DNA of 8,619 bases. Origin: Octopus sinensis (Eukaryota). Where the stretch lies: assembly GCF_006345805.1 (NCBI RefSeq), contig NW_021828381.1, positions 1-8,619 of the forward strand, given 5' to 3'. Below the pieces are notes generated by a model. That model had not been told where the DNA came from and did not search any database. It was given only the letters and a program-made list of their open reading frames with translations. Every line of letters begins with the position of its first letter. Positions within the stretch are counted from its first letter, which is position 1. Both the position numbers and the translations under genes were made by a program. This document shows positions 1-8,619 of this stretch, in pieces.

Positions 1-311
1 TTGATCTTTTACATACAAATGTAACAAAAAGGAAACAAAACTTATATAACGTGTGTGATATTTTGCATGCCGAAGGTACGGTCTGCCGAAAAAAAAGTAT
101 TTGATGTTTTATAAATTAGATAATAAAAAAAGCTAATAATGTCAAAAATAATGTGATTTTATTGAAAAATATATTGATTCCTATTTTATAGATTAGCCAT
201 AGCGCTAAATAAAAACTTAAACCTAACTCAAAACAGAGTTCTACCCTATCTAGAACCCTAATGTTAATAATTTTAAAAAAATTTTGATTTTATAGAATAA
301 TATTATGTCAC

Positions 312-347
312 ATGGGCGACTTGAAGCCTATGGGTGACCTGAAGCTT
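312..347 (+). repeat. Two-copy 18-bp tandem direct repeat
   Basis: ATGGGCGACTTGAAGCCT (312-329) and ATGGGTGACCTGAAGCTT (330-347): 15/18 identical, all three differences are C/T transitions. Confidence 0.7.
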
Positions 348-353
348 TTACGT

Positions 354-367
354 GTTGCCACGGTAAC
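354..367. promoter_or_regulatory. Candidate RFX X-box
   Basis: GTTGCC-AC-GGTAAC is an imperfect palindrome matching the GTNRCC-N(0-3)-RGYAAC X-box consensus. Motif match only, no functional evidence. Confidence 0.25.
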
Positions 368-523
368 CATGATACGTTACATAATAAAATATCATGTAGC
401 TCATATAGACACAATTCTAAAGTAATTTGTTATTTTCAAATAAAAAAAATAATTAAAACTGTATATATTAAATGGCTGACCTATTTTCTGTAGAATTTTG
501 TCGCATGGTATTGGTGTTATCTA

Positions 524-685
524 ATGTCGCACTTCAGGGCTTATGTCAAGGATATTAATGAATACGACAACATTAAAAAGATATTATGTGGAATTCAAAT
601 TGAGGATACCAATACTCAGAGGAATCGCAGATTGCGAAAAAAATCCTCACATTTTTTCGTGAGGAACAATAAGTTTTACGTTTAA
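524..685 (+). CDS. 53-aa ORF not in the supplied track, resembling the N-terminal segment of GIN1/Ginger-type (gypsy-like) integrases; possibly a truncated exon
   Basis: Manual translation gives MSHFRAYVKDINEYDNIKKILCGIQIEDTNTQRNRRLRKKSSHFFVRNNKFYV*. The frame is open from 494, just after a TTTTCTGTAG acceptor-like sequence. The resemblance is by eye only. Confidence 0.3.
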   Translation: MSHFRAYVKDINEYDNIKKILCGIQIEDTNTQRNRRLRKKSSHFFVRNNKFYV

Positions 686-725
686 TTCTAATTTAATTTA
701 GACTGTTTCTGAAAGGAAATATTGA

Positions 726-1609
726 ATTGGCGAAGGCGGCCATAAACTTGCCTTAGTTACTCCGCAAAAGTCAGCACTAGTCCTAAAGGGGATTCCGCGA
801 TGGATCTCCAATCGGGACCTAGAGCTGCACCTGAAGGAAACCCTCAGTTCGGTGTTCGTTCTCGAGCGATTCACGCGAGATGGTCTCAACATCCCAGTTG
901 CTAAGCTGACGCTTGACTCACGAGCTGAAGCTACTTCTTTGATCCGCACCGGAATCACAGCTGGTTTCTGCCTTATCACCTGTGAATGGTTCAGACCTCC
1001 TGTCGTCCGATGTTTCCATTGTCAGAGATTCGGACACCTGTCCCGTAACTGTCAAGAAAAAGCCCGGTGCTTATACTGCGGCAAGGACCACGACCGAAGG
1101 GAATGCCCAGGCAGCAAACAAAGTCTAGTGGAGCCCTGCGGTCGGCATTGTATCAATTGTGACCGCCCCGGCCACCTCGCTTCGTATGGTGGATGCCCGA
1201 CGGCCAAAGCTGCAACAGCAGCTAAATGGGCCGCCGCGCAGAAGCAATGCCTCGGTCTCCTAACCCAACCCGCATGGTAATGGTAAAAGCTAAGCCGGTC
1301 ACGCCTATCTGGAAAGTACGGCCGCTAATAACCCCGTGTGTGGCGGACGCCCATACCCAGACGACGCAAGTCGTTGAGGTTGGTGCGCAGAGCATGCAGG
1401 CCCCTGTCGCCGAGGCTGTGAAACCGAGGCCCGTCAGCCCAATAAGGAACGGTACTCAGCAGGCCAAAACGCAGGCGAAGGTAGACTCTCACAACAAGGA
1501 TGCTCTGTTGGAATTTTACCAACGCTGTGTCGACGCACTGCTGAAACTGGGAGTCAAACCCAAGAAGCTAGAAGAGCTCCTATCAGAGAGGAGCTCGCCA
1601 GCAAAATGA
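726..1609 (+). pseudogene. E1 ORF1, gag-like nucleic-acid-binding protein; 5'-truncated, with one -1 frameshift near 1224-1226
   Basis: The frame of the 852 ORF is open back to 726 (includes LVLKGIPRWISNRDLELHL). Knuckles: CFHCQRFGHLSRNC, CLYCGKDHDRREC, CINCDRPGHLASYGGC. The 1226-1609 ORF is its continuation: IWKVRPLITPCVADAHTQT aligns with E2 VWRKPTISRCFDSSTQT. Confidence 0.88.
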
Positions 1610-4215
1610 CCACGTCACTAAAAATCATCGCTGTGAATGCCCGATCTGTCAAGAGACGGCACCTCGACTTCGTTGAGATGGTAAACAGCGGCCATCCTGA
1701 CTTAATCGTCGTCAACGAGTCTAAGCTGAAAGAAGGTCAATGCTTCGAATTGCCAGGATACTGCTCCCTTGACCTGAAATGGAGAAATAACTCTACGCCT
1801 GGGACTGGGACGACTATCTACTACCTGCAAAATCTCAAGACACGTAACCTCAAGACTATCGAACGGAACCTATGCGAATTTATCTCGCTAGAGATTAAAA
1901 CCCAGCGCTTTTGGTTAAAAGTGGGCGGAATATATTGCAAAAACCTTGCTCCATGCATCGGTCTTATCGAAGACTTCTTTGTCAGCTCAAATCATTGCCT
2001 CCTCATCGGTGATCTAAACTCCAAACACACGGCATTTGGTTGTCGCGTGACCAATCGGGACGGCCGGTTACTTGAAAGAGCGGCAGGTAGGCTAGACGTC
2101 TGTGTCCGCACCTCGAAAGCCCGGAACCACCGCTCCCCATTCGGCTGGGACAACCTTTGCGTAGCACTGAGCTCTCAATCAGTCGCGAATCTTATGGGAG
2201 AACCAATAGTACTCGACGATATTGGGAGCGACCACCTGCCAATGCAGGTCTGTGTCCACGTCTCGGTAGACACCCAAATCCGTTGCCCACCACGATACAC
2301 CCTTTCGAACATCAACTGGGCGCACTAACGTTATGCTCTGAACTTGTTCTTTCGCAACAACGTACGCCCAGGCAGCTATCAATCTACCTCGGACATCGAC
2401 AACTCGGGCGCCGAATTGACGGACTTCATGCGACTCTACTTGGAAGCCCACGCTAGGAGGGTGCGCCCAACTAGCAAGGGCATTACACATCAAAAACCCC
2501 AAACTTCTCCAACTTCTGGGCGAAAAGAAACGCCTGCGAAACAAGCTCAAACGCTGTGCCGACCCAACGGACCAAGGTACCCTAAGGTCGGAAATCTCTC
2601 TGCTCAACCACAAATTGAACTCACAAGAAAGAAAGATCTTGAGAGGATGTGGAAGAAGGCCTGCTCTGGTCTTAATCACAGGAACCCAAACTTCTGGATA
2701 GCCTACAACAGACTCTCTAATCATCTCGTGAACTCTCCGGCACCAGAATTATCGAACTCAGCTGGAATGCCTGCGTCGGTGGAGGAAATCCCCAACATAT
2801 TTGCTGATCACCTGGACCGTCCTCTGCCGGACCATGAGGATCGCTGGGGAAACTCACATGCCAGTCCTATAGACCAAGCAGACTCCCTATCTGTTGATCA
2901 TCACCCAATCACCGCCGCTGAGGTGACCTGGGCCATCCTCTCGGCGAGGGACAACGCACCGGGGCATGACATGCTACCAATGAAAATGTTCAAAGAAGGC
3001 CCTCCGGAACTGTCTGAGTTTTTGGCACGCCTCTTCTCGGCTAGTCTTCGCTGGAGCCACGTTCCAAGTGCCTGGAAAGTCGCCGAAATCCGGATGATCA
3101 AGAAACCTGCAAAACCAGCTAACCTTGCCAGCAGCTATCGACCCATCAGTCTAATACCAACGATCTCGAGGCTTATGGAAAAAAATTATGACCAAACGCT
3201 TCGACTCCTTCGCTGAGCAGAAATGCGTGCTTCTGCCCCAGCAGTGGGGCTTCCGCTCGGGGCGCAGCTGCGCCGATTGTTTTCTGATTCTCCAATCGAT
3301 GGCTTTGAAAGCAATGGAGTTCAACGAAACTTTATCTTGCATCTGCCTTGACATCTCTAAAGCATTCGACAGCGTGTACCACCCAGACCTATTGGACAGG
3401 GTTCGCAGTTGTGAGCCAACGAGAGAGGCATTTCTCTGGCTGAATTGCTTTCTTTCTAACCGTATCTCCTTTGTGTCCCAGTCGGGCTTTCACTCCAGAG
3501 ATATACATCTCCGAAGGGGTGTCCCGCAGGGATCCAGTCTCAGCCCGCTGCTGTTCAACCTTGTGATGAGCAGCTTCCCTTCCTTCCCCAATCCGCGGAC
3601 AACTTTCCTCTTGTACGCTGATGACGTCCTCATTATGGATATTTCAAAAAGCCCCGCACTCTCGGAGCACCGTCTTTCCAGCTACATCGGAATGATAGAG
3701 ACCTGGTGTCGGGGTAAACAACTATCCATTGCTATGGACAAGTCGGCGTACCTTGAAATTAACTCACGGCGCAAATCGAGGCAAGAGCCTGAGATTCTCA
3801 GAAGACTTCCCCGCCCGAGCCACATTCGCTATCTGGGCTTGACGGTAGACTCTAACTCGGAGTACTTACTGCACATCACCCAAAAAAGGAAAAAGGCCGT
3901 TGCGGCCCTTCGCTTCCTGAGGGGTATGCATTTGGCCCCGACACTTTTCTGTTTGTCTTTCGCGCGACGATCCTCCCAAGTCTCTTGTATGGGATGGAGG
4001 CGTGGCACTATTCAAACCAATTCGGAAAAATATTGAAAAAATGTGAGAAGATCCGTCGCTATGCGTTAAAGCTAGCGTACAGATTGGATCTACGCGCCCC
4101 GCTACCCAACTGGGCAGAGGAGAAATCTCCACTAATCGAGAAAGTCATCCTTGATTCCATCCGAACTTTTCGTCGGCGGTCTCAGGTGACCGATCTTTTC
4201 GTGGATCGCGTCTGA
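1606..4215 (+). pseudogene. E1 ORF2, AP-endonuclease plus reverse transcriptase, disrupted
   Basis: APE motifs VNARS, VNESK, GDLNSKH, WD, GSDH. RT motifs YRPISL, QWGFR, LDISKAFD, GVPQGS, YADD (3614-3625), YLG. Lesions versus E2: in-frame TAA at 2326-2328, +1 at ~2500, -1 at ~2613, +1 in A7 at 3179-3185, -1 at ~3940. Confidence 0.95.
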
Positions 4216-4371
4216 AATTCAATCAGAGAGTGACTCTTCAAAACCCGCTCATATATTCCCTTAGGACGAATCTCGCAGAGCTCGACTGTCTTCGCAGTCG
4301 TCTCGTTTAACCTCGTCCACCTTTTTACTTAGTCTCTGTTTTACTTACAATAAAACTTTCCATTCATTCCT
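4216..4371 (+). other. E1 3'UTR with stem-loop, AATAAA and short TTCC(A/T)-type tail
   Basis: Follows the ORF2 stop. CGACTG/CAGTCG hairpin (4283-4300) inside GGACGA/TCGTCC (4264-4269/4313-4318). AATAAA at 4349-4354. The terminal motif is shared with E2. Confidence 0.75.
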
Positions 4372-4373
4372 GA

Positions 4374-5069
4374 GGTTTTACTTTCCAACGGTTCTACAAA
4401 AATGGACGGAGTATACCTGTTGGAAAGTTGAGTCTGAATTCGAGGGCAGAAGCCACTTCGCTTGTAAGGATGGGAATCGAAGTGGGATTTCAAAAAATAC
4501 GATGCGAATGGTTTAAAAACCCAGCAACAAGATGCTTTCGCTGCCAACAATTTGGTCACATTGCTAACTTCTGCAAAGAAGTGGAAAGATGTCTTTTCTG
4601 TGGTGGTGATCATAATATGAAAATGTGCCCGATTAAAGGAAAAACTGAGAAAAAATGTATAAACTGCGGTCTGAGTGGGCATTTGGCTTGCTACGGTGGC
4701 TGCTCTTCAGCTAAGGCAGCCACTGAACAACTAAAAAAGCAGCTCAGTGCCAGGGACAGACTGGCCAAAGCAGAACACTCAAAAACTGTATGGTCAAAAG
4801 CGGAGGCCGTTGAATCTGTATGGCGAAAACCCACAATTTCCCGCTGTTTTGACTCCTCAACGCAAACAGATGTTAGTGAAGACGCAACTTTGCCTCCCAA
4901 TACACAACACACAGAGCCTCCAACCCGCTTTAAGAGGAAAGCACCAACTATCGACGTTGAGCTTACCTCTATGATTCGCAAAATAATCGCTATATGCGAT
5001 GAAAAAGGCCTCGATATCAACAATCTGTTGTCCCTTTCTCTTGGAAGGGAAAGGATTGATCAGGCGTGA
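4374..5069 (+). CDS. E2 ORF1 (gag-like, three CCHC knuckles), lacking its N-terminus
   Basis: The frame is open upstream of the tracked 4428 start back to 4374. GFTFQRFYKNGRSIPVGKLSLNSR aligns with E1 VFVLERFTRDGLNIPVAKLTLDSR. Knuckles: CFRCQQFGHIANFC, CLFCGGDHNMKMC, CINCGLSGHLACYGGC. Confidence 0.9.
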   Translation, partial: GFTFQRFYKNGRSIPVGKLSLNSRAEATSLVRMGIEVGFQKIRCEWFKNPATRCFRCQQFGHIANFCKEVERCLFCGGDHNMKMCPIKGKTEKKCINCGLSGHLACYGGCSSAKAATEQLKKQLSARDRLAKAEHSKTVWSKAEAVESVWRKPTISRCFDSSTQTDVSEDATLPPNTQHTEPPTRFKRKAPTIDVELTSMIRKIIAICDEKGLDINNLLSLSLGRERIDQA

Positions 5070-7660
5070 GCCCCTTTCTGTCTATTATCGCTGTGAACGC
5101 ACGTTCTCTAAAGAGAAGGCGTTCAGAGATTGAGGATATGTTATCCCATAACCCCGTGGACCTTTTGATCGTAAACGAAACAAAAATCAAAAAACATGAT
5201 GATTACTACTTGGATGGCTATCGTTCCCTTGATATTAAGTGGAAGCCGGGCTCGATCGCTGGAACAGGCACTTCTATCTACTACAAATCAACTCTAAGGG
5301 TGAAAAATCTAAAAATTGTGTCCGAGGAATTGTGTGAATTCCTCACAATCGACGTCCTTCTGGAAAAAGGGTGGGTAACAATCGGAGGGATGTACTCAAA
5401 ATCCCTTTCCAATTATTCATCGCTTATCAAGGACTTTTTTGCCGATAAACACAATCATTTGTCAATACTCCTCGGGGATCTAAATGCCAAATGCATCATT
5501 CTTAAGAAGCTTTCAGAATCTCTCAGTTTCTCGGTCATCACATCAAAAACCCCAAATCATTACTCACCAGGAGGGTGGGACTATTTGGGCGTAGCATTGG
5601 TCTCTATGTCTACTCTTCAATTTATGGAACAACCGTACACCTTAAATGATATTGGAAGTGACCATCTACCAATTTTATACAAACTCAACCTTGGACCTTT
5701 AAAGGGTAAACCAACTTTTATACGATATAACCTCTCGACTATAAACTGGGAACACTACCGAAAATGTTTTACACTTTATCTGAGCAATTTCGCTCCTAAA
5801 CTTGACGAAAATTCTTCATCTGAGGACCTCGAGAAGTCTAGCAATTCCCTTATTGGATACATAAAGTCTTATCTGGAAACATATTCTACAAAAATCGTCT
5901 CAAACAATAGGAAAACTCACATGCCAAACATGAATGTTGAAATCCTACTAAGGAAAAAACAATGTCTAAGGAACAAACTCCGGCGCTGCGCAGATTTTCG
6001 TGACCGGTCCGTTTTGGAAAGTGAAATCTTCACCATTACGGAAGAAATAAGAAAATCGGCGAAGGTGGCGAAGGATAAAAAATGGAATACTGAGTGCAAA
6101 AAGCTACATAAAGGAAGTCCAAATTTTTGGAAGGTCTACTCGAAATTAACCTCGACGTCTGAGAAAACTATACCTAAACTGCTAAAACAAGATGGATCCC
6201 CTGCATCTCATGAAGAAATCCCGAACATATTTGCTGATAGTCTCAAAAGAATACAAGAAGTCAATCCGGATACAAATCTATCTGATTCAGCTTTGTTTGA
6301 TATGGAAAAAGAGTTGGAAGACAATCTTAGCTCATTACCAATGTGCTCGGAATCTATAACGTGCAAAGACGTGGAAAATGCAGTTAGATACTCCAAAAAT
6401 AACGCTCCGGGAAAGGACAAGATAACCATGCGCATGTTCAAAGAAGCTCCCAAGCAACTTTACGAATATTTGGGATGTCTCTTCTCCCGCAGTGTGAGCT
6501 TGGGATACGTCCCTTCTTCATGGAAACTGACGGAGGTAAGGATGATACGGAAGCCTGGAAAACCTGGTTACTTGGCGACAAGTTATAGGCCTATAAGCCT
6601 AATTCCTACCATCAGTCGAATAATGGAAAGGGTAATGTTTGAACGACTCTCTGAACACGTCGAGAGAAATGGTTATCTCAAAGACGTGCAGTGGGGCTTT
6701 CGGAGGGGTCGTTCCTGTGCTGACTGTCTTTATACACTCAATTCGTCGATTGTAAAGGCTCTGGATTTCAAAGAGTGTCTGACAATTGTGTCTCTAGACA
6801 TCTCAAAAGCCTTTGATATGGTTTGGCACCTCGGTCTCCTTAGACATCTGGCGAAGTGTCACATAGACAAAGGACTATTCCTATGGCTAAAAGACTTCCT
6901 CCGCGACAGGCGCTCTGTGATAAGCTTTCTGAACTATGACTCGGATGAACTGAAACTTAAAAGAGGCGTCCCTCAAGGATCAGTCCTCAGTCCTCTATTA
7001 TTCAACATTGTGATGAGCAATCTGCCGTCTCCTGTCAACACACGGACGGAAATTTTGATATACGCCGATGATGTTGTAATCCTTGACATTTCATCGAAAC
7101 CTGCCTTATCCGAACAAAGGATTATATCATATATGAATACAGTGGAGCAATGGTGCGATGAAAATATGTTCATTATTGCGCGTGAGAAGTCCGCATTACT
7201 GAGAATCACAGAAAGCAGAAATTTAATAAATTTACCGTGCCTGATCAAGAACATACCTCGACAAAACTCAATTAAATATCTTGGCTTGTTCATCGATGAA
7301 AAGGGAAACTATCTCGAAAACGCAAAATTAAGTAAAAGGAAAGCAACTAATGCTCTGTTCTGCCTGAGGAAGTTAAATTTGGAGCCTGATACTTTCCTCT
7401 ACGTTTTCAATACGGTGATCCTACCGGGACTACTATACGGAAAAGAGGGATGGTACTTCTCTAAAAAGAAGGACACCATCTTAACTAAATTTGAAAAGTC
7501 TCGCAGGCTCGCTTTGAAGCTTGCTTACCACCAAAAAGTTGAAGATCCAATCCCCCTGTGGCTTGAAAGTAAATCCTCCATGGTCGGTGAAACTGTCGAA
7601 AAAGCTATAAGTGGTTATAAATCCAACTCAATTGTCACTGGGACGTACCTGCAGAGGTAG
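5066..7660 (+). CDS. E2 ORF2, APE endonuclease-reverse transcriptase (864 aa), GTG start
   Basis: Uninterrupted ORF. APE motifs VNARS, VNETK, GDLN, WD, GSDH. RT motifs YRPISL, QWGFR, LDISKAFD, GVPQGSVLSPLLF, YADD (7061-7072), YLG. No RNase H or C-terminal CCHC; ends at the same relative position as E1 ORF2. Confidence 0.96.
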   Translation: MSPFLSIIAVNARSLKRRRSEIEDMLSHNPVDLLIVNETKIKKHDDYYLDGYRSLDIKWKPGSIAGTGTSIYYKSTLRVKNLKIVSEELCEFLTIDVLLEKGWVTIGGMYSKSLSNYSSLIKDFFADKHNHLSILLGDLNAKCIILKKLSESLSFSVITSKTPNHYSPGGWDYLGVALVSMSTLQFMEQPYTLNDIGSDHLPILYKLNLGPLKGKPTFIRYNLSTINWEHYRKCFTLYLSNFAPKLDENSSSEDLEKSSNSLIGYIKSYLETYSTKIVSNNRKTHMPNMNVEILLRKKQCLRNKLRRCADFRDRSVLESEIFTITEEIRKSAKVAKDKKWNTECKKLHKGSPNFWKVYSKLTSTSEKTIPKLLKQDGSPASHEEIPNIFADSLKRIQEVNPDTNLSDSALFDMEKELEDNLSSLPMCSESITCKDVENAVRYSKNNAPGKDKITMRMFKEAPKQLYEYLGCLFSRSVSLGYVPSSWKLTEVRMIRKPGKPGYLATSYRPISLIPTISRIMERVMFERLSEHVERNGYLKDVQWGFRRGRSCADCLYTLNSSIVKALDFKECLTIVSLDISKAFDMVWHLGLLRHLAKCHIDKGLFLWLKDFLRDRRSVISFLNYDSDELKLKRGVPQGSVLSPLLFNIVMSNLPSPVNTRTEILIYADDVVILDISSKPALSEQRIISYMNTVEQWCDENMFIIAREKSALLRITESRNLINLPCLIKNIPRQNSIKYLGLFIDEKGNYLENAKLSKRKATNALFCLRKLNLEPDTFLYVFNTVILPGLLYGKEGWYFSKKKDTILTKFEKSRRLALKLAYHQKVEDPIPLWLESKSSMVGETVEKAISGYKSNSIVTGTYLQR

Positions 7661-7687
7661 AAAAGAAAAAAAAAAAAAAAAAAAAAA
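7661..7687 (+). repeat. Poly(A) tract (AAAAG + A22) immediately after the ORF2 stop, internal to the inferred 3'UTR
   Basis: Read directly from the sequence. The family 3'-terminal motif lies ~100-160 nt further downstream. Confidence 0.85.
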
Positions 7688-7783
7688 TTTACTTGAGGGG
7701 GTCTCTCTTTTTTTTTTCTGGAAGAAGTCGATAGGGTAGTCCTATTGTTTCATTATACAAACTCCCCCCTAACCTTTAACCCT

Positions 7784-7820
7784 TCTCTGTTTCCAATAAA
7801 ACTTCCTATTCCTATTCCTA
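7784..7820 (+). other. E2 3'-terminal motif: TCTCTGTTT, CAATAAAACTT and (TTCCTA)3 tail
   Basis: TCTCTGTTT at 7784-7792, AATAAA at 7795-7800, three perfect TTCCTA units at 7803-7820. Counterpart in E1 at 4333-4371. Confidence 0.8.
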
Positions 7821-7829
7821 GTATTTGTT

Positions 7830-8433
7830 TTAGTGGGTGAACAATCCTACACTTTGCCGATTATGCTTCGCAATGATAGGAAGAGCCAACATCGAAGGAT
7901 CAAAAAGCACCGTCGCTATGTACGCTTGGGTGCCACAAGCCAATTATCCCTGTGGTAACTTTTCTGTCACCTTTAACTTAAGCTTATAAAAGTAAAAGGA
8001 TCGATAGGCCACGCTTTCGCGCCTTGCATACGTACTGAACAATGCAAATAAGGTGAGCTTTTACCCTTTCGCGCTATGGTAGATTCTGTTCCACCTGAGC
8101 TCACCTTTGGACATCTGCTTTATTGTTTAGCAGATGTACCGCCCCAGCCAAACTCCCCAAATGACACTGTTTTCAGATCCGATCGACCCCGAACGGGCCT
8201 TACACTGCAAACTTTCCCATTAAGGAAGCACGGTATTACTGAATTAGTAGGAAGACGACTGAGGAAGTGGTCTTACATTGTCGCTGCGGAACAGCTCCCA
8301 CCTATACTATATCCCCAATGTCCTCCTACAATGCCAATCTAGAGTCCAAGCTCAACAGGGTCTTCTTTCCCCGCTGATTGTCACGGGCCCGTTACCCCGT
8401 CTGTGGTTTCGCTAGAGTGCTGATAGGGACAGT

Positions 8434-8464
<31 letters not shown>

Positions 8465-8475
8465 TCAATTAAATT

Positions 8476-8507
<32 letters not shown>
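7830..8507 (-). rRNA. 28S rRNA: Internal fragment of a eukaryotic LSU (28S/26S-type) rRNA gene, from the helix 69 loop to just beyond the A-loop; interrupted at both ends
   Basis: The minus strand reads TATGACTCTCTTAAGGTAGCCAAATGCCTCG...GAGATTCCCACTGTCCC...CAGCGGGGAAAGAAGACCCTGTTGAGCTT...GGGAGTTTGGCTGGGGCGG...CACAGGGATAA...TTTTTGATCCTTCGATG...GGATTGTTCACCCACTAA, all conserved eukaryotic LSU blocks. Confidence 0.97.
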
Positions 8508-8512
8508 TCATA

Positions 8513-8619
8513 TTAATTTGGAGCCTGATACTTTCCTCTACGTTTTCAATACGGTGATCCTACCGGGACTACTATACGGAAAAGAGGGATGGTACTTCTC
8601 TAAAAAGAAGGACACCATC
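8513..8619 (+). mobile_element. Third, heavily 5'-truncated copy of E2 (starts in the C-terminal part of ORF2, runs off the window)
   Basis: 8515-8619 is identical to 7376-7480 (105/105). The match extends to 8513 if one A is lost from TTAAATTT. Confidence 0.93.

What the first reader, a model, noticed from the sequence alone, without database searches (positions are those of the whole stretch)
8480..8619. Same element family rejoins the same rRNA fragment 678 bp away, in the helix 69 loop: second target, transduced rDNA, or giant duplication
Seen: the rRNA stops at ...CCTTAAGAGAGTCATA (8507) instead of continuing GTTACTCCCGCC, and a 105/105-identical E2 segment starts at ~8515. The break (C1914/U1915 equivalent) is 16 nt upstream, in rRNA sense, of the intact R2 site at 8491/8492. 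Inferred models: (a) a second insertion site in H69; (b) E2 read-through transcripts carried 678 nt of antisense rRNA as a 3' transduction, giving a repeating [E2 3' end + rRNA] unit; (c) a very long target-site duplication, conceptually like the long TSD described for rotifer R9; (d) misassembly. Perfect identity implies recent activity or an artefact.
Basis: partly seen in the sequence, partly recalled or inferred. Interest (0 to 1): 0.8.

Follow-up and report, generated by a model that had tools for sequence, protein, structure and literature searches.

The report
Second truncated retrotransposon copy joined to rDNA
A piece of ribosomal RNA gene is flanked on both sides by the same jumping gene, and the second junction looks like the start of a shortened second copy. 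This is most likely an unusual duplication at the element's one normal target, a variant of what R1 elements do in flies, and not a new target site; the sequence ends too soon to prove it.

Summary
Antisense eukaryotic LSU rRNA runs from 7830 to 8507 (678 nt). It starts exactly at the 3' end of an APE/RT LINE ('E2', copy 1, about 4374-7829) and stops inside the helix 69 loop, 16 nt from an intact R2 site. Seven extra bases follow (TCATATT, of which TCATA repeats the preceding 5 nt). Then 8515-8619 repeats E2 7376-7480 at 105/105, and the window ends.

The junction has the anatomy of the 5' junction of a second, 5'-truncated E2 copy, head-to-tail with copy 1.

I could not extend the window. E2 is absent from every collection searched, and its best protein relatives are 27% identical.

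Best reading, about 0.35 for the specific mechanism and about 0.6 for its class: copy 2 also sits at the normal site, and only its 5' join is abnormal. It was sealed 678 bp downstream, giving a very long target-site duplication.

A plain tandem duplication, a deletion between neighbouring inserted units, and an RT template jump all give the identical sequence. A true second target in H69 has no significant site similarity (about 0.15). An assembly artefact remains possible (about 0.1).

The closest precedent is R1 tandem arrays with rDNA spacers. Interest is moderate.

The parts
1..725 (.). AT-rich non-rRNA DNA (24-31% GC) upstream of E1. It shows that this is not a canonical rDNA unit on the E1 side.
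   Evidence: Composition. No rRNA or other Rfam match. No antisense 28S sequence from beyond the site. No Pfam match for its small ORFs.
726..4376 (+). E1: a GC-rich (about 50%), degenerate APE/RT LINE with a CCHC ORF1. It has no start Met for ORF1. ORF1 and ORF2 are broken by at least one in-frame stop (2326-2328) and several frameshifts. Its 3' tail abuts E2 copy 1.
   Evidence: ORF pieces. Pfam zf-CCHC, Exo_endo_phos and RVT_1. 43-46% amino-acid identity to E2. 3' UTR end homologous to the E2 3' end (D6).
4374..7829 (+). E2 copy 1: an APE/RT LINE, 5'-truncated within ORF1 relative to E1 (homology starts at GFTFQRF). ORF1 runs to 5069 and has three CCHC knuckles. ORF2 (5066-7660) is intact at 864 aa. 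The 3' UTR carries an A4GA22 run (7661-7687) and ends ...TATTTGTT with no poly(A) tail.
   Evidence: Sequence read.
4371..4380 (+). E1 tail / E2 copy 1 head junction, ambiguous over about 7-9 nt (GGTTTTA). It may retain TTA, the first 3 nt of the rRNA at the target site. No rDNA spacer is present.
   Evidence: Alignments; reading.
7830..8507 (-). A 678-nt fragment of eukaryotic LSU rRNA, antisense to E2. It runs from the helix 69 loop (8507) to CACCCACUAA (7830). The R2 site is intact at 8491/8492. The fragment carries compensatory changes, so it derives from a real, divergent rRNA.
   Evidence: Rfam (603 bits, few non-canonical pairs; for example CGGGG...CCCG replaces CAAGG...CUUG)..
7829..7830 (.). 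Normal E2 3' junction ('site S'): rRNA sense CACCCACUAA|UAGGGAACG, in the A-loop/H92-H93 region. It lies 2 nt from a group I intron site (CACCCACU|AAUAGGG).
   Evidence: Intron-bearing rDNA contigs L003, L005 and L006.
8503..8514 (+). Junction: the last rRNA bases TCATA (8503-8507) followed by the 7-nt filler TCATATT (8508-8514). An AGTCA^TAG-like match to the site S core ACTAA^TAG lies on the + strand 2 nt before the break.
8515..8619 (+). E2 copy 2: the start of a 5'-truncated copy, identical to E2 7376-7480 (the last ~95 codons of ORF2 begin here). It is cut off by the end of the window.
   Evidence: D1, 105/105.

Best explanation
The junction at 8507-8515 is the 5' junction of a second, 5'-truncated copy of E2, lying head-to-tail with copy 1.

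E2 and its diverged relative E1 form an APE-type LINE family. It inserts antisense at one site of the 28S gene (S: CACCCACUAA|UAGGG) by target-primed reverse transcription from a nick in the rRNA-sense strand.

My preferred mechanism is as follows. After copy 1 was in place, the same nick position was used again, because the half-site on the rRNA side survives an insertion. A new cDNA was made but stopped at E2 position 7376. Its end was then joined, with a few polymerase-added bases (TCATATT), to an E2-sense-strand end 678 bp downstream, in the helix 69 loop, instead of next to the nick.

Filling in then duplicates the 678 bp. This gives copy 1 - rDNA(678) - copy 2 - rDNA(678) - rest of 28S, which is a very long target-site duplication.

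Shown: both junctions, the orientation, the truncation point, the filler, and the stacking of E1 and E2 at one position.

Inferred: that copy 2 is followed by TTAGTGGG, that S is a specific target, and that the far break was the second-strand break of the same insertion event.
For: Geometry. A break in the E2-sense strand downstream of the primer nick must leave the upstream flank of the new copy ending at that break, and must leave an rDNA spacer that begins exactly at S. Both are seen.

The junction looks like a TPRT 5' junction. It has a 5' truncation plus extra, locally templated bases. This matches what is described for 5'-truncated R1 and R2 copies (PMC2718515, sections 9-15).

Repeated use of one site. 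The E1 3' tail, homologous to the E2 tail, abuts the truncated head of E2 copy 1 within a few nt and with no spacer. E2 copy 1 in turn abuts rRNA at S without a poly(A) tail.

Precedent. R1 forms tandem arrays separated by duplicated 28S sequence. These include low-copy tandems with longer or shorter rDNA spacers and 5'-truncated tandems (PMC2718515 section 13; PMC5932611).

Weak support. On the E2-sense strand, AGTCA^TAG lies 2 nt before the break and matches the site S nick core ACTAA^TAG at 6 of 8 positions. This is in the top 0.9% of positions, or about 0.12 after correcting for 14 positions tested.

Relative ages fit. E1 is heavily degenerate, whereas E2 ORF2 is intact and copy 2 equals copy 1.
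Against: The window ends 105 nt into copy 2, so its 3' flank, the key prediction, is unseen.

No other E2 copy could be found anywhere, so site specificity rests on one 3' junction plus the stacking.

Three other mechanisms give the identical sequence and cannot be separated here: a plain tandem duplication, a deletion between adjacent inserted units, and a template jump.

The other E2 5' junction in the window (with E1) was made at or next to the nick, so a 678-bp stagger would be exceptional for this family.

The similarity of the far break to the nick site is not significant after correction.

E1 is flanked upstream by non-rDNA, so the locus is already rearranged.
Confidence: 0.35

Rival explanations
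1. A rearrangement without retrotransposition. Either a 1139-bp tandem duplication of [E2 7376-7829 + rDNA 678] sealed by end joining or polymerase slippage, or an end-joining deletion running from the H69 loop of one rDNA unit into an E2 copy at site S of the neighbouring unit. Both leave exactly the sequence seen.
For: The predicted sequence is identical to the observed one. A short filler that copies the adjacent 5 nt (TCATA TCATA) is typical of templated insertions at end-joined breaks (general knowledge). The locus is already rearranged, since E1 is flanked by non-rDNA. Unequal exchange is known to act on such dimers (PMC5932611).
Against: This needs a separate rare event with both breakpoints inside this 1.1 kb, or a deletion of nearly a whole rDNA unit. 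A 5'-truncated element with extra bases at its head is the ordinary signature of TPRT at a site that this window shows was used repeatedly.
Confidence: 0.22
2. A second insertion site. E2 nicked the rRNA-sense strand in or next to the helix 69 loop and inserted a truncated copy there, in the same unit and orientation as copy 1. The 678 bp is then simply the rDNA between two targets.
For: This is the simplest reading of the map. It needs no duplication. R1 and R2 co-occupy single units, and R1 has many off-target insertions at sites resembling its target (PMC2718515 section 14). E2's endonuclease lacks 12 residues after GDLNAK that E1 has, so its specificity could be altered.
Against: The H69 break does not resemble site S on the strand that would be nicked. 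The best match within +/-3 nt is 7/20 overall and 4/8 in the core, which is the top 11-20% of all positions in the fragment. An off-target hit landing 678 bp from S, in the same orientation and next to an occupied S, would be a coincidence. The duplication-type models explain it automatically.
Confidence: 0.15
3. A single chimeric insertion made by an RT template jump. Reverse transcription primed at S copied a 5'-degraded E2 RNA to position 7376, added a few bases, jumped to the 3' end of a read-through E2 transcript carrying 678 nt of antisense rRNA, and copied it up to the truncated head now next to E1.
For: One event explains copy 1, the spacer starting exactly at S, the filler and copy 2 together, inserted between the E1 tail and S. 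End-to-end template jumps with added nucleotides are a known property of R2 RT, cited in PMC2718515 section 10. Elements without poly(A), such as R1, use read-through transcripts (general knowledge).
Against: It needs a read-through RNA ending exactly in H69 with no sign of why. ATTAAA at 8468-8473 lies 34 nt upstream, and there is no poly(A). In vivo chimeras of this size are rare.
Confidence: 0.08
4. An assembly artefact. Either a chimeric read or graph loop joins rDNA to E2, or the contig merges different rDNA units, so copy 1 and copy 2 are not on one molecule. In that case the 105/105 identity is simply the same graph node used twice.
For: The window ends 105 nt into a repeat of itself, as contigs do when they re-enter a repeat. 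Both rDNA and E2 are multicopy. No reads are available.
Against: The junction carries a templated 5-nt duplication, which a blunt chimeric join would not make (1/1024 by chance). A path through 8508-8514 requires reads with that junction. The orientation and the exact start of the spacer at S fit a biological process.
Confidence: 0.1

Closest known systems
R1 tandem arrays / double insertions in Drosophila rDNA (PMC2718515; PMC5932611)
   Same: A site-specific APE LINE without a poly(A) tail. Copies lie head-to-tail. They are separated by a piece of 28S that begins at the element's normal 3' junction. 5'-truncated members and variable spacer lengths occur. Non-templated bases are found at 5' junctions.
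   Different: R1 spacers are 14 or 33 nt, equal to its TSD, whereas here the spacer is 678 nt. R1 lies in the rRNA sense orientation at another site, whereas E2 is antisense at CACCCACUAA|UAGGG. R1 tandems arise by insertion into the 5' TSD copy, whereas E1/E2 copy 1 here stack with no spacer.
R9 of bdelloid rotifers (126-bp target-site duplication in 28S; from memory, cited as ref. 22 in PMC5035012)
   Same: An rDNA-specific element whose second-strand break lies far from the primer nick, giving an exceptionally long duplication of 28S.
   Different: R9 has a restriction-like endonuclease and belongs to the R2 group, and its 126-bp TSD is a regular property of every copy. E2 has an APE endonuclease. 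678 bp would be over five times longer. The only other 5' junction of E2 in the window shows no such stagger.
L1-type 3' transduction and RT template-switch chimeras
   Same: Flanking DNA downstream of a source copy is carried between element sequences.
   Different: There is no poly(A) after the carried segment. The flank upstream of copy 1 is not the other half of an interrupted E2.
R2 families with 28S-like sequence in their 3' UTR and shifted 5' junctions (PMC5035012, section 14)
   Same: The 5' junction is displaced by about 110-130 bp from the canonical site, and 28S sequence is associated with the element's end.
   Different: There the result is a replacement (deletion) of 28S, and the 28S-like part has diverged as true 3' UTR. 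Here the geometry is that of a duplication, and the rRNA is a normal gene fragment.

Membership tests
R1-like tandem dimer (element - rDNA spacer - element) | Two copies of the same element lie head-to-tail in the same orientation. | tested here: met
   8515-8619 equals 7376-7480 on the same strand.
R1-like tandem dimer (element - rDNA spacer - element) | The spacer is rDNA that starts exactly at the element's normal 3' junction. | tested here: met
   rRNA starts at 7830, directly after the E2 tail, and is continuous to 8507.
R1-like tandem dimer (element - rDNA spacer - element) | The same rDNA segment also follows the second copy (spacer = TSD). | not testable with these tools
   The window ends at 8619. 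No other copy or longer contig was found.
R1-like tandem dimer (element - rDNA spacer - element) | The element is specific for one rDNA site. | tested here: inconclusive
   There is one precise 3' junction at S, plus E1 and E2 stacked tail-to-head at the same place. No independent copies were available.
R9-type long TSD element | Restriction-like endonuclease, R2-group protein. | tested here: not met
   ORF2 has an N-terminal Exo_endo_phos (APE) domain and RVT_1.
R9-type long TSD element | Every copy is flanked by the same long duplication. | tested here: not met
   The 5' junction of E2 copy 1 abuts the E1 tail with at most 3 nt of possible rDNA.
R1 clade of non-LTR retrotransposons | APE + RT ORF2, and an ORF1 with three CCHC knuckles. 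| tested here: met
   Pfam. Three Cys-His motifs were read in ORF1.
R1 clade of non-LTR retrotransposons | Phylogenetic placement of the RT within the clade. | not tested
   The best database relatives are unnamed and only 24-27% identical. The PDB hits are L1 ORF2p and R2.
R1 clade of non-LTR retrotransposons | A Cys-His motif downstream of the RT in ORF2 (from memory). | tested here: not met
   No Cys-His motif is present in the last ~120 residues of ORF2.
L1-type 3' transduction | The transduced flank ends in poly(A), and the whole unit is flanked by the two halves of its target. | tested here: not met
   TCATATT, not poly(A), lies at 8508. Upstream of copy 1 is the E1 tail, not E2 ...7375.
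Eukaryotic LSU rRNA gene fragment | A match to the family covariance model above the gathering score. | tested here: met
   RF02543, 590-603 bits against a cut-off of 50.

The most novel reading that the evidence does not exclude
E2 is a new antisense-inserting, 28S-specific APE LINE that does one of two things. Either it can place its second-strand nick at a distant endonuclease-like site (AGTCA^TAG in the helix 69 loop), creating a 678-bp target-site duplication. From memory, I know of no longer TSD for a LINE. Or it genuinely uses the H69 loop as a second target. Either way it builds [element tail + rDNA] repeat units that could seed a satellite.
Probability: 0.25. Interest if true: 0.65.

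Novelty: new variant of a known kind. Interest (0 to 1): 0.4.

Why it matters
How the second half of LINE integration is completed (second-strand break and 5' joining) is still poorly understood. A site-specific element whose 5' join lies 678 bp from its primer nick, with both ends in a sequence known to the base, would be a clean natural example.

It would also show the first step from double insertion towards a TE/rDNA satellite, as proposed for the Drosophila R1 array.

If it is instead a rearrangement or an assembly loop, it is ordinary. The element family itself has no close relative in the databases searched, inserts antisense to the rRNA and sits 2 nt from a group I intron site. It is more interesting than this one junction.

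Tried and rejected
Extending the window or finding other E2 copies all failed:
- Exact-protein look-up of ORF2: nothing.
- Protein database searches with E2 ORF2 and the E1 RT: best hits 27% and at most 39% identity, no close relatives.
- The contigs of the two best hits are bare elements without flanks.
- Searches with the C-terminal 94 aa in viral and metagenome contigs: none.
- Exact E2 tail and an rRNA signature of this lineage in genome contigs: none.

A junction-pattern scan (E2 tail GTT + antisense rRNA) in metagenomes returned four loci. Three are group I introns at CACCCACU|AAUAGGG, one of them with a His-Cys box ORF. The fourth is a PIF1-helicase contig. None is a LINE.

Simple 3' transduction was rejected: no poly(A), and the wrong upstream flank.

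Insertion of copy 2 before E1 (R1-style insertion into an upstream TSD copy) was rejected because E1 is far more degenerate than the identical E2 copies.

I looked for 28S sequence from beyond site S upstream of E1 and found none.

I looked for ribozymes or other RNAs at the element heads and found none.

My first impression that 524-685 encodes an LTR-retrotransposon pol remnant got no Pfam support.

Literature searches did not yield a map showing whether any named R element uses site S, nor a statement on orientation. Those points rest on memory.

Full report
**What is in the window**

Bases 1-725 are AT-rich DNA (24-31% GC). This stretch has no rRNA or other Rfam match, and its small ORFs match no Pfam family.

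From about 726 to 4376 lies E1, a GC-rich and degenerate LINE. Its ORF1 has CCHC knuckles and its ORF2 has an APE endonuclease and a reverse transcriptase. ORF2 is broken by an in-frame stop and by frameshifts.

E2 copy 1 abuts E1 directly and runs from about 4374 to 7829. It belongs to the same family but is only 43-46% identical to E1 in protein. Its ORF1 homology begins at GFTFQRF, inside E1's ORF1, so the copy is 5'-truncated. Its ORF2 (5066-7660, 864 aa) is intact.

The 3' UTRs of E1 and E2 are homologous to their very ends (D6). E2 ends ...TATTTGTT at 7829 without a poly(A) tail.

From 7830 to 8507 runs eukaryotic LSU rRNA on the minus strand, antisense to E2 (Rfam RF02543, 590-603 bits; TTAGTGGGTGAAC at 7830). 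The fragment keeps the structure through compensatory changes, for example CGGGG...CCCG where the consensus has CAAGG...CUUG. It therefore derives from a real, rather divergent rRNA gene.

**Check of the observation**

- In rRNA sense the fragment ends ...CACCCACUAA at the E2 tail. I call this position 'site S': CACCCACUAA|UAGGGAACG.
- The fragment begins UAUGACUCUCUUAAGG. The break falls within the 11-position loop of the hairpin that Rfam pairs as GGA...UCUC. This is helix 69.
- The R2 site at 8491/8492 is intact and lies 16 nt from the break.
- After 8507 come seven bases, TCATATT. Then 8515-8619 equals 7376-7480 at 105/105, and the window ends.
- TCATA in the filler repeats the five bases before it. 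That has probability 1/1024 for a random filler, so the extra bases were copied by a polymerase. They were not produced by a blunt chimeric join.

**What the junction is**

Copy 2 has the same orientation as copy 1. It starts at an internal position of E2 and is preceded by a few extra bases. This is the standard anatomy of the 5' junction of a 5'-truncated non-LTR element. Microhomologies, non-templated bases and small duplications at such junctions are documented for R1 and R2 (PMC2718515).

The map is therefore E1 - E2 copy 1 - 678 bp rDNA - truncated E2 copy 2.

**Geometry**

E2 cDNA synthesis must be primed by the 3' end of the rRNA-sense strand at S. Suppose the E2-sense strand is broken downstream of S, at position S-677, instead of opposite the nick. 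Its 3' end (...GAGAGTCATA) then primes second-strand synthesis, and fill-in duplicates the 678 bp.

The new copy then has an upstream flank that runs from S to S-677 and ends at the break. That is exactly what is seen.

The rRNA half of site S survives an insertion, so a second event at the same nick, next to the tail of copy 1, gives the observed order in one step.

The window itself shows that this position is reused. The E1 tail and the E2 copy 1 head meet within a 7-9 nt ambiguous stretch (GGTTTTA, 4371-4380). This stretch may retain TTA, the first bases of the rRNA at S.

**Mechanisms that cannot be told apart here**

Three other mechanisms give the identical final sequence:
- a plain 1139-bp tandem duplication;
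- an end-joining deletion from H69 of one unit into an E2 copy at S in the next unit;
- a single chimeric insertion made by an RT template jump from a degraded E2 RNA to a read-through E2+rRNA transcript.

All four predict TTAGTGGGTG after the tail of copy 2. Only a true second insertion site predicts GTTACTCC.

**Weighing the models**

*Second target.* I compared a 20-nt window around the S nick with every position of the fragment on both strands. Canonical 28S sequence, from general knowledge, stood in for the two missing flanks.
- On the strand that a second-site insertion would nick, the best match within +/-3 nt of the break is 7/20 overall and 4/8 in the core. That is the top 11-20% of positions, so it is unremarkable.
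- On the E2-sense strand, AGTCA^TAG lies 2 nt before the break and matches the core ACTAA^TAG at 6 of 8 positions. That is the top 0.9% of positions, or about 0.12 after correcting for the 14 positions tested.
- This is a weak hint that the element's own endonuclease made the distant second-strand nick.

*Simple 3' transduction.* This is contradicted. There is no poly(A) at 8508, and the DNA upstream of copy 1 is the E1 tail, not the other half of an interrupted E2.

*R1-style order* (copy 2 first, later insertions into the upstream duplicate). This is unlikely because E1 is far more decayed than the identical E2 copies.

*Artefact.* A window that stops 105 nt into a repeat of itself looks like a contig ending as it re-enters a repeat. 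In that case the perfect identity says nothing about age. The junction-spanning sequence and its templated filler must nevertheless exist in reads.

My estimates:
- long TSD: 0.35;
- non-TPRT duplication or deletion: 0.22;
- second site: 0.15;
- artefact: 0.10;
- template jump: 0.08;
- something else: the remainder.

Together, about 0.6-0.65 that copy 2 is followed by TTAGTGGG.

**Attempts to get more sequence**

- No gene with exactly E2's ORF2 product is on record.
- The closest proteins among 5.8 billion are 24-27% identical for E2 and at most 39% for the E1 RT.
- The contigs of the two best hits are bare elements without flanks.
- Viral, metagenome and prokaryotic-genome collections hold no relative and no exact match.
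- A scan for the junction motif GTT+TTAGTGGGTGAACAATCC found four metagenome contigs.
- Three of these carry group I introns at CACCCACU|AAUAGGG, 2 nt from S. One of the three has a His-Cys box ORF.
- The fourth encodes a PIF1-like helicase. It carries two copies of a 29-mer identical to window 7826-7854, in a non-rDNA context. I cannot explain this.

**Comparison with what is known**

The closest precedent is R1.
- In seven Drosophila species, R1 copies form tandem arrays at the normal site, separated by the 14-bp 28S TSD (PMC2718515 section 13).
- D. melanogaster has a megabase-scale R1 array with 33-nt rDNA spacers.
- It also has low-copy tandems with other spacer lengths, and 5'-truncated tandems. 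These are thought to start as double insertions and to expand by unequal exchange (PMC5932611).

The present case shares the head-to-tail order, the rDNA spacer that starts at the normal 3' junction, the truncation and the extra bases. It differs in three ways. The spacer is 678 bp. The element lies antisense to the rRNA at a different site. E1 and E2 copy 1 stack without a spacer.

R9 of rotifers (126-bp TSD; from memory) is the known long-TSD case. It is an RLE element, and its TSD is regular.

I file this as a new variant of a known kind. Membership in the R1 clade was not tested phylogenetically. By reading, the C-terminal Cys-His motif that I recall for that clade is absent.

**Verdict**

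The structure is most likely an aberrant, duplication-type 5' junction at the one normal target, not a second target in helix 69. Interest is moderate (0.4). The decisive data are the next ~1.2 kb and spanning long reads.

Noticed in passing
window 4374-7829 vs 7830-8507: E2, and by inference E1, lies antisense to the rRNA gene. It cannot be co-transcribed with the rRNA as R1 and R2 are. From memory, all named 28S/18S-specific R elements are sense-oriented. I found no statement on this in the papers searched.
   Followed up: partly
window 7829/7830; L003 4894-5194, L006 624-922 (minus), L005 ~213-1026: The E2 insertion point CACCCACUAA|UAGGG is 2 nt from a group I intron site (CACCCACU|AAUAGGG). 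That site is occupied in three unrelated metagenome rDNA contigs. The L005 intron carries a His-Cys box homing-endonuclease-like ORF.
   Followed up: partly
L004 2523-2551 and 2677-2705: A metagenome contig encodes a PIF1-like (Helitron-type?) helicase and is not rDNA. It carries two copies, 154 bp apart, of a 29-mer identical to window 7826-7854 (E2 tail TGTT + 25 nt of antisense rRNA). The 29-mer includes the window's CCTACACTT variant. I have no explanation.
   Followed up: partly
window 1606-1609 and 5066-5069: ORF1 stop and ORF2 start overlap as ATGA in E1, a stop-start coupling arrangement like that described for SART1 (from memory). In E2 the same position reads GTGA, and the first ATG of ORF2 is 24 codons further in.
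   Followed up: no
window ~5480-5500 (E2 ORF2 residues ~139-145) vs E1 2020-2060: E2's endonuclease lacks 12 residues that E1 has just after the GDLN(A/S)K motif (HTAFGCRVTNRD...). Pfam covers only the first half of E2's APE domain well. The endonuclease may be altered or impaired even though the ORF is intact.
   Followed up: no
window 726-4376 vs 4374-7829: E1 is about 50% GC and E2 about 41% GC, in a flank of 24-31% GC. The more degenerate element is the more GC-rich one, which is odd if both have long resided in an AT-rich genome.
   Followed up: no
window 7661-7687: An A4GA22 run sits directly after the ORF2 stop codon of E2, inside the 3' UTR and about 140 nt before the real 3' end. E1 has nothing comparable.
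   Followed up: no
window 7949 region (rRNA, minus strand; GGGAUAAUUGGC): The rRNA fragment has U where the peptidyl-transferase-centre base C2452 (E. coli numbering, from memory) is nearly universal. It also has UGUCCAAAGG in place of UGUCCUAAGG. Compensatory changes occur elsewhere in the fragment. The copy could come from a very divergent lineage or could be a decaying orphan.
   Followed up: partly
window 4380-4428: An 18-nt inverted repeat (83% complementary, 13-nt loop) lies at the truncated head of E2 copy 1, within ORF1-homologous sequence.
   Followed up: no
window 312-345: A short tandem direct repeat, ATGGGCGACTTGAAGCCT / ATGGGTGACCTGAAGCTT, lies in the AT-rich flank. The origin of the flank is unknown.
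   Followed up: no
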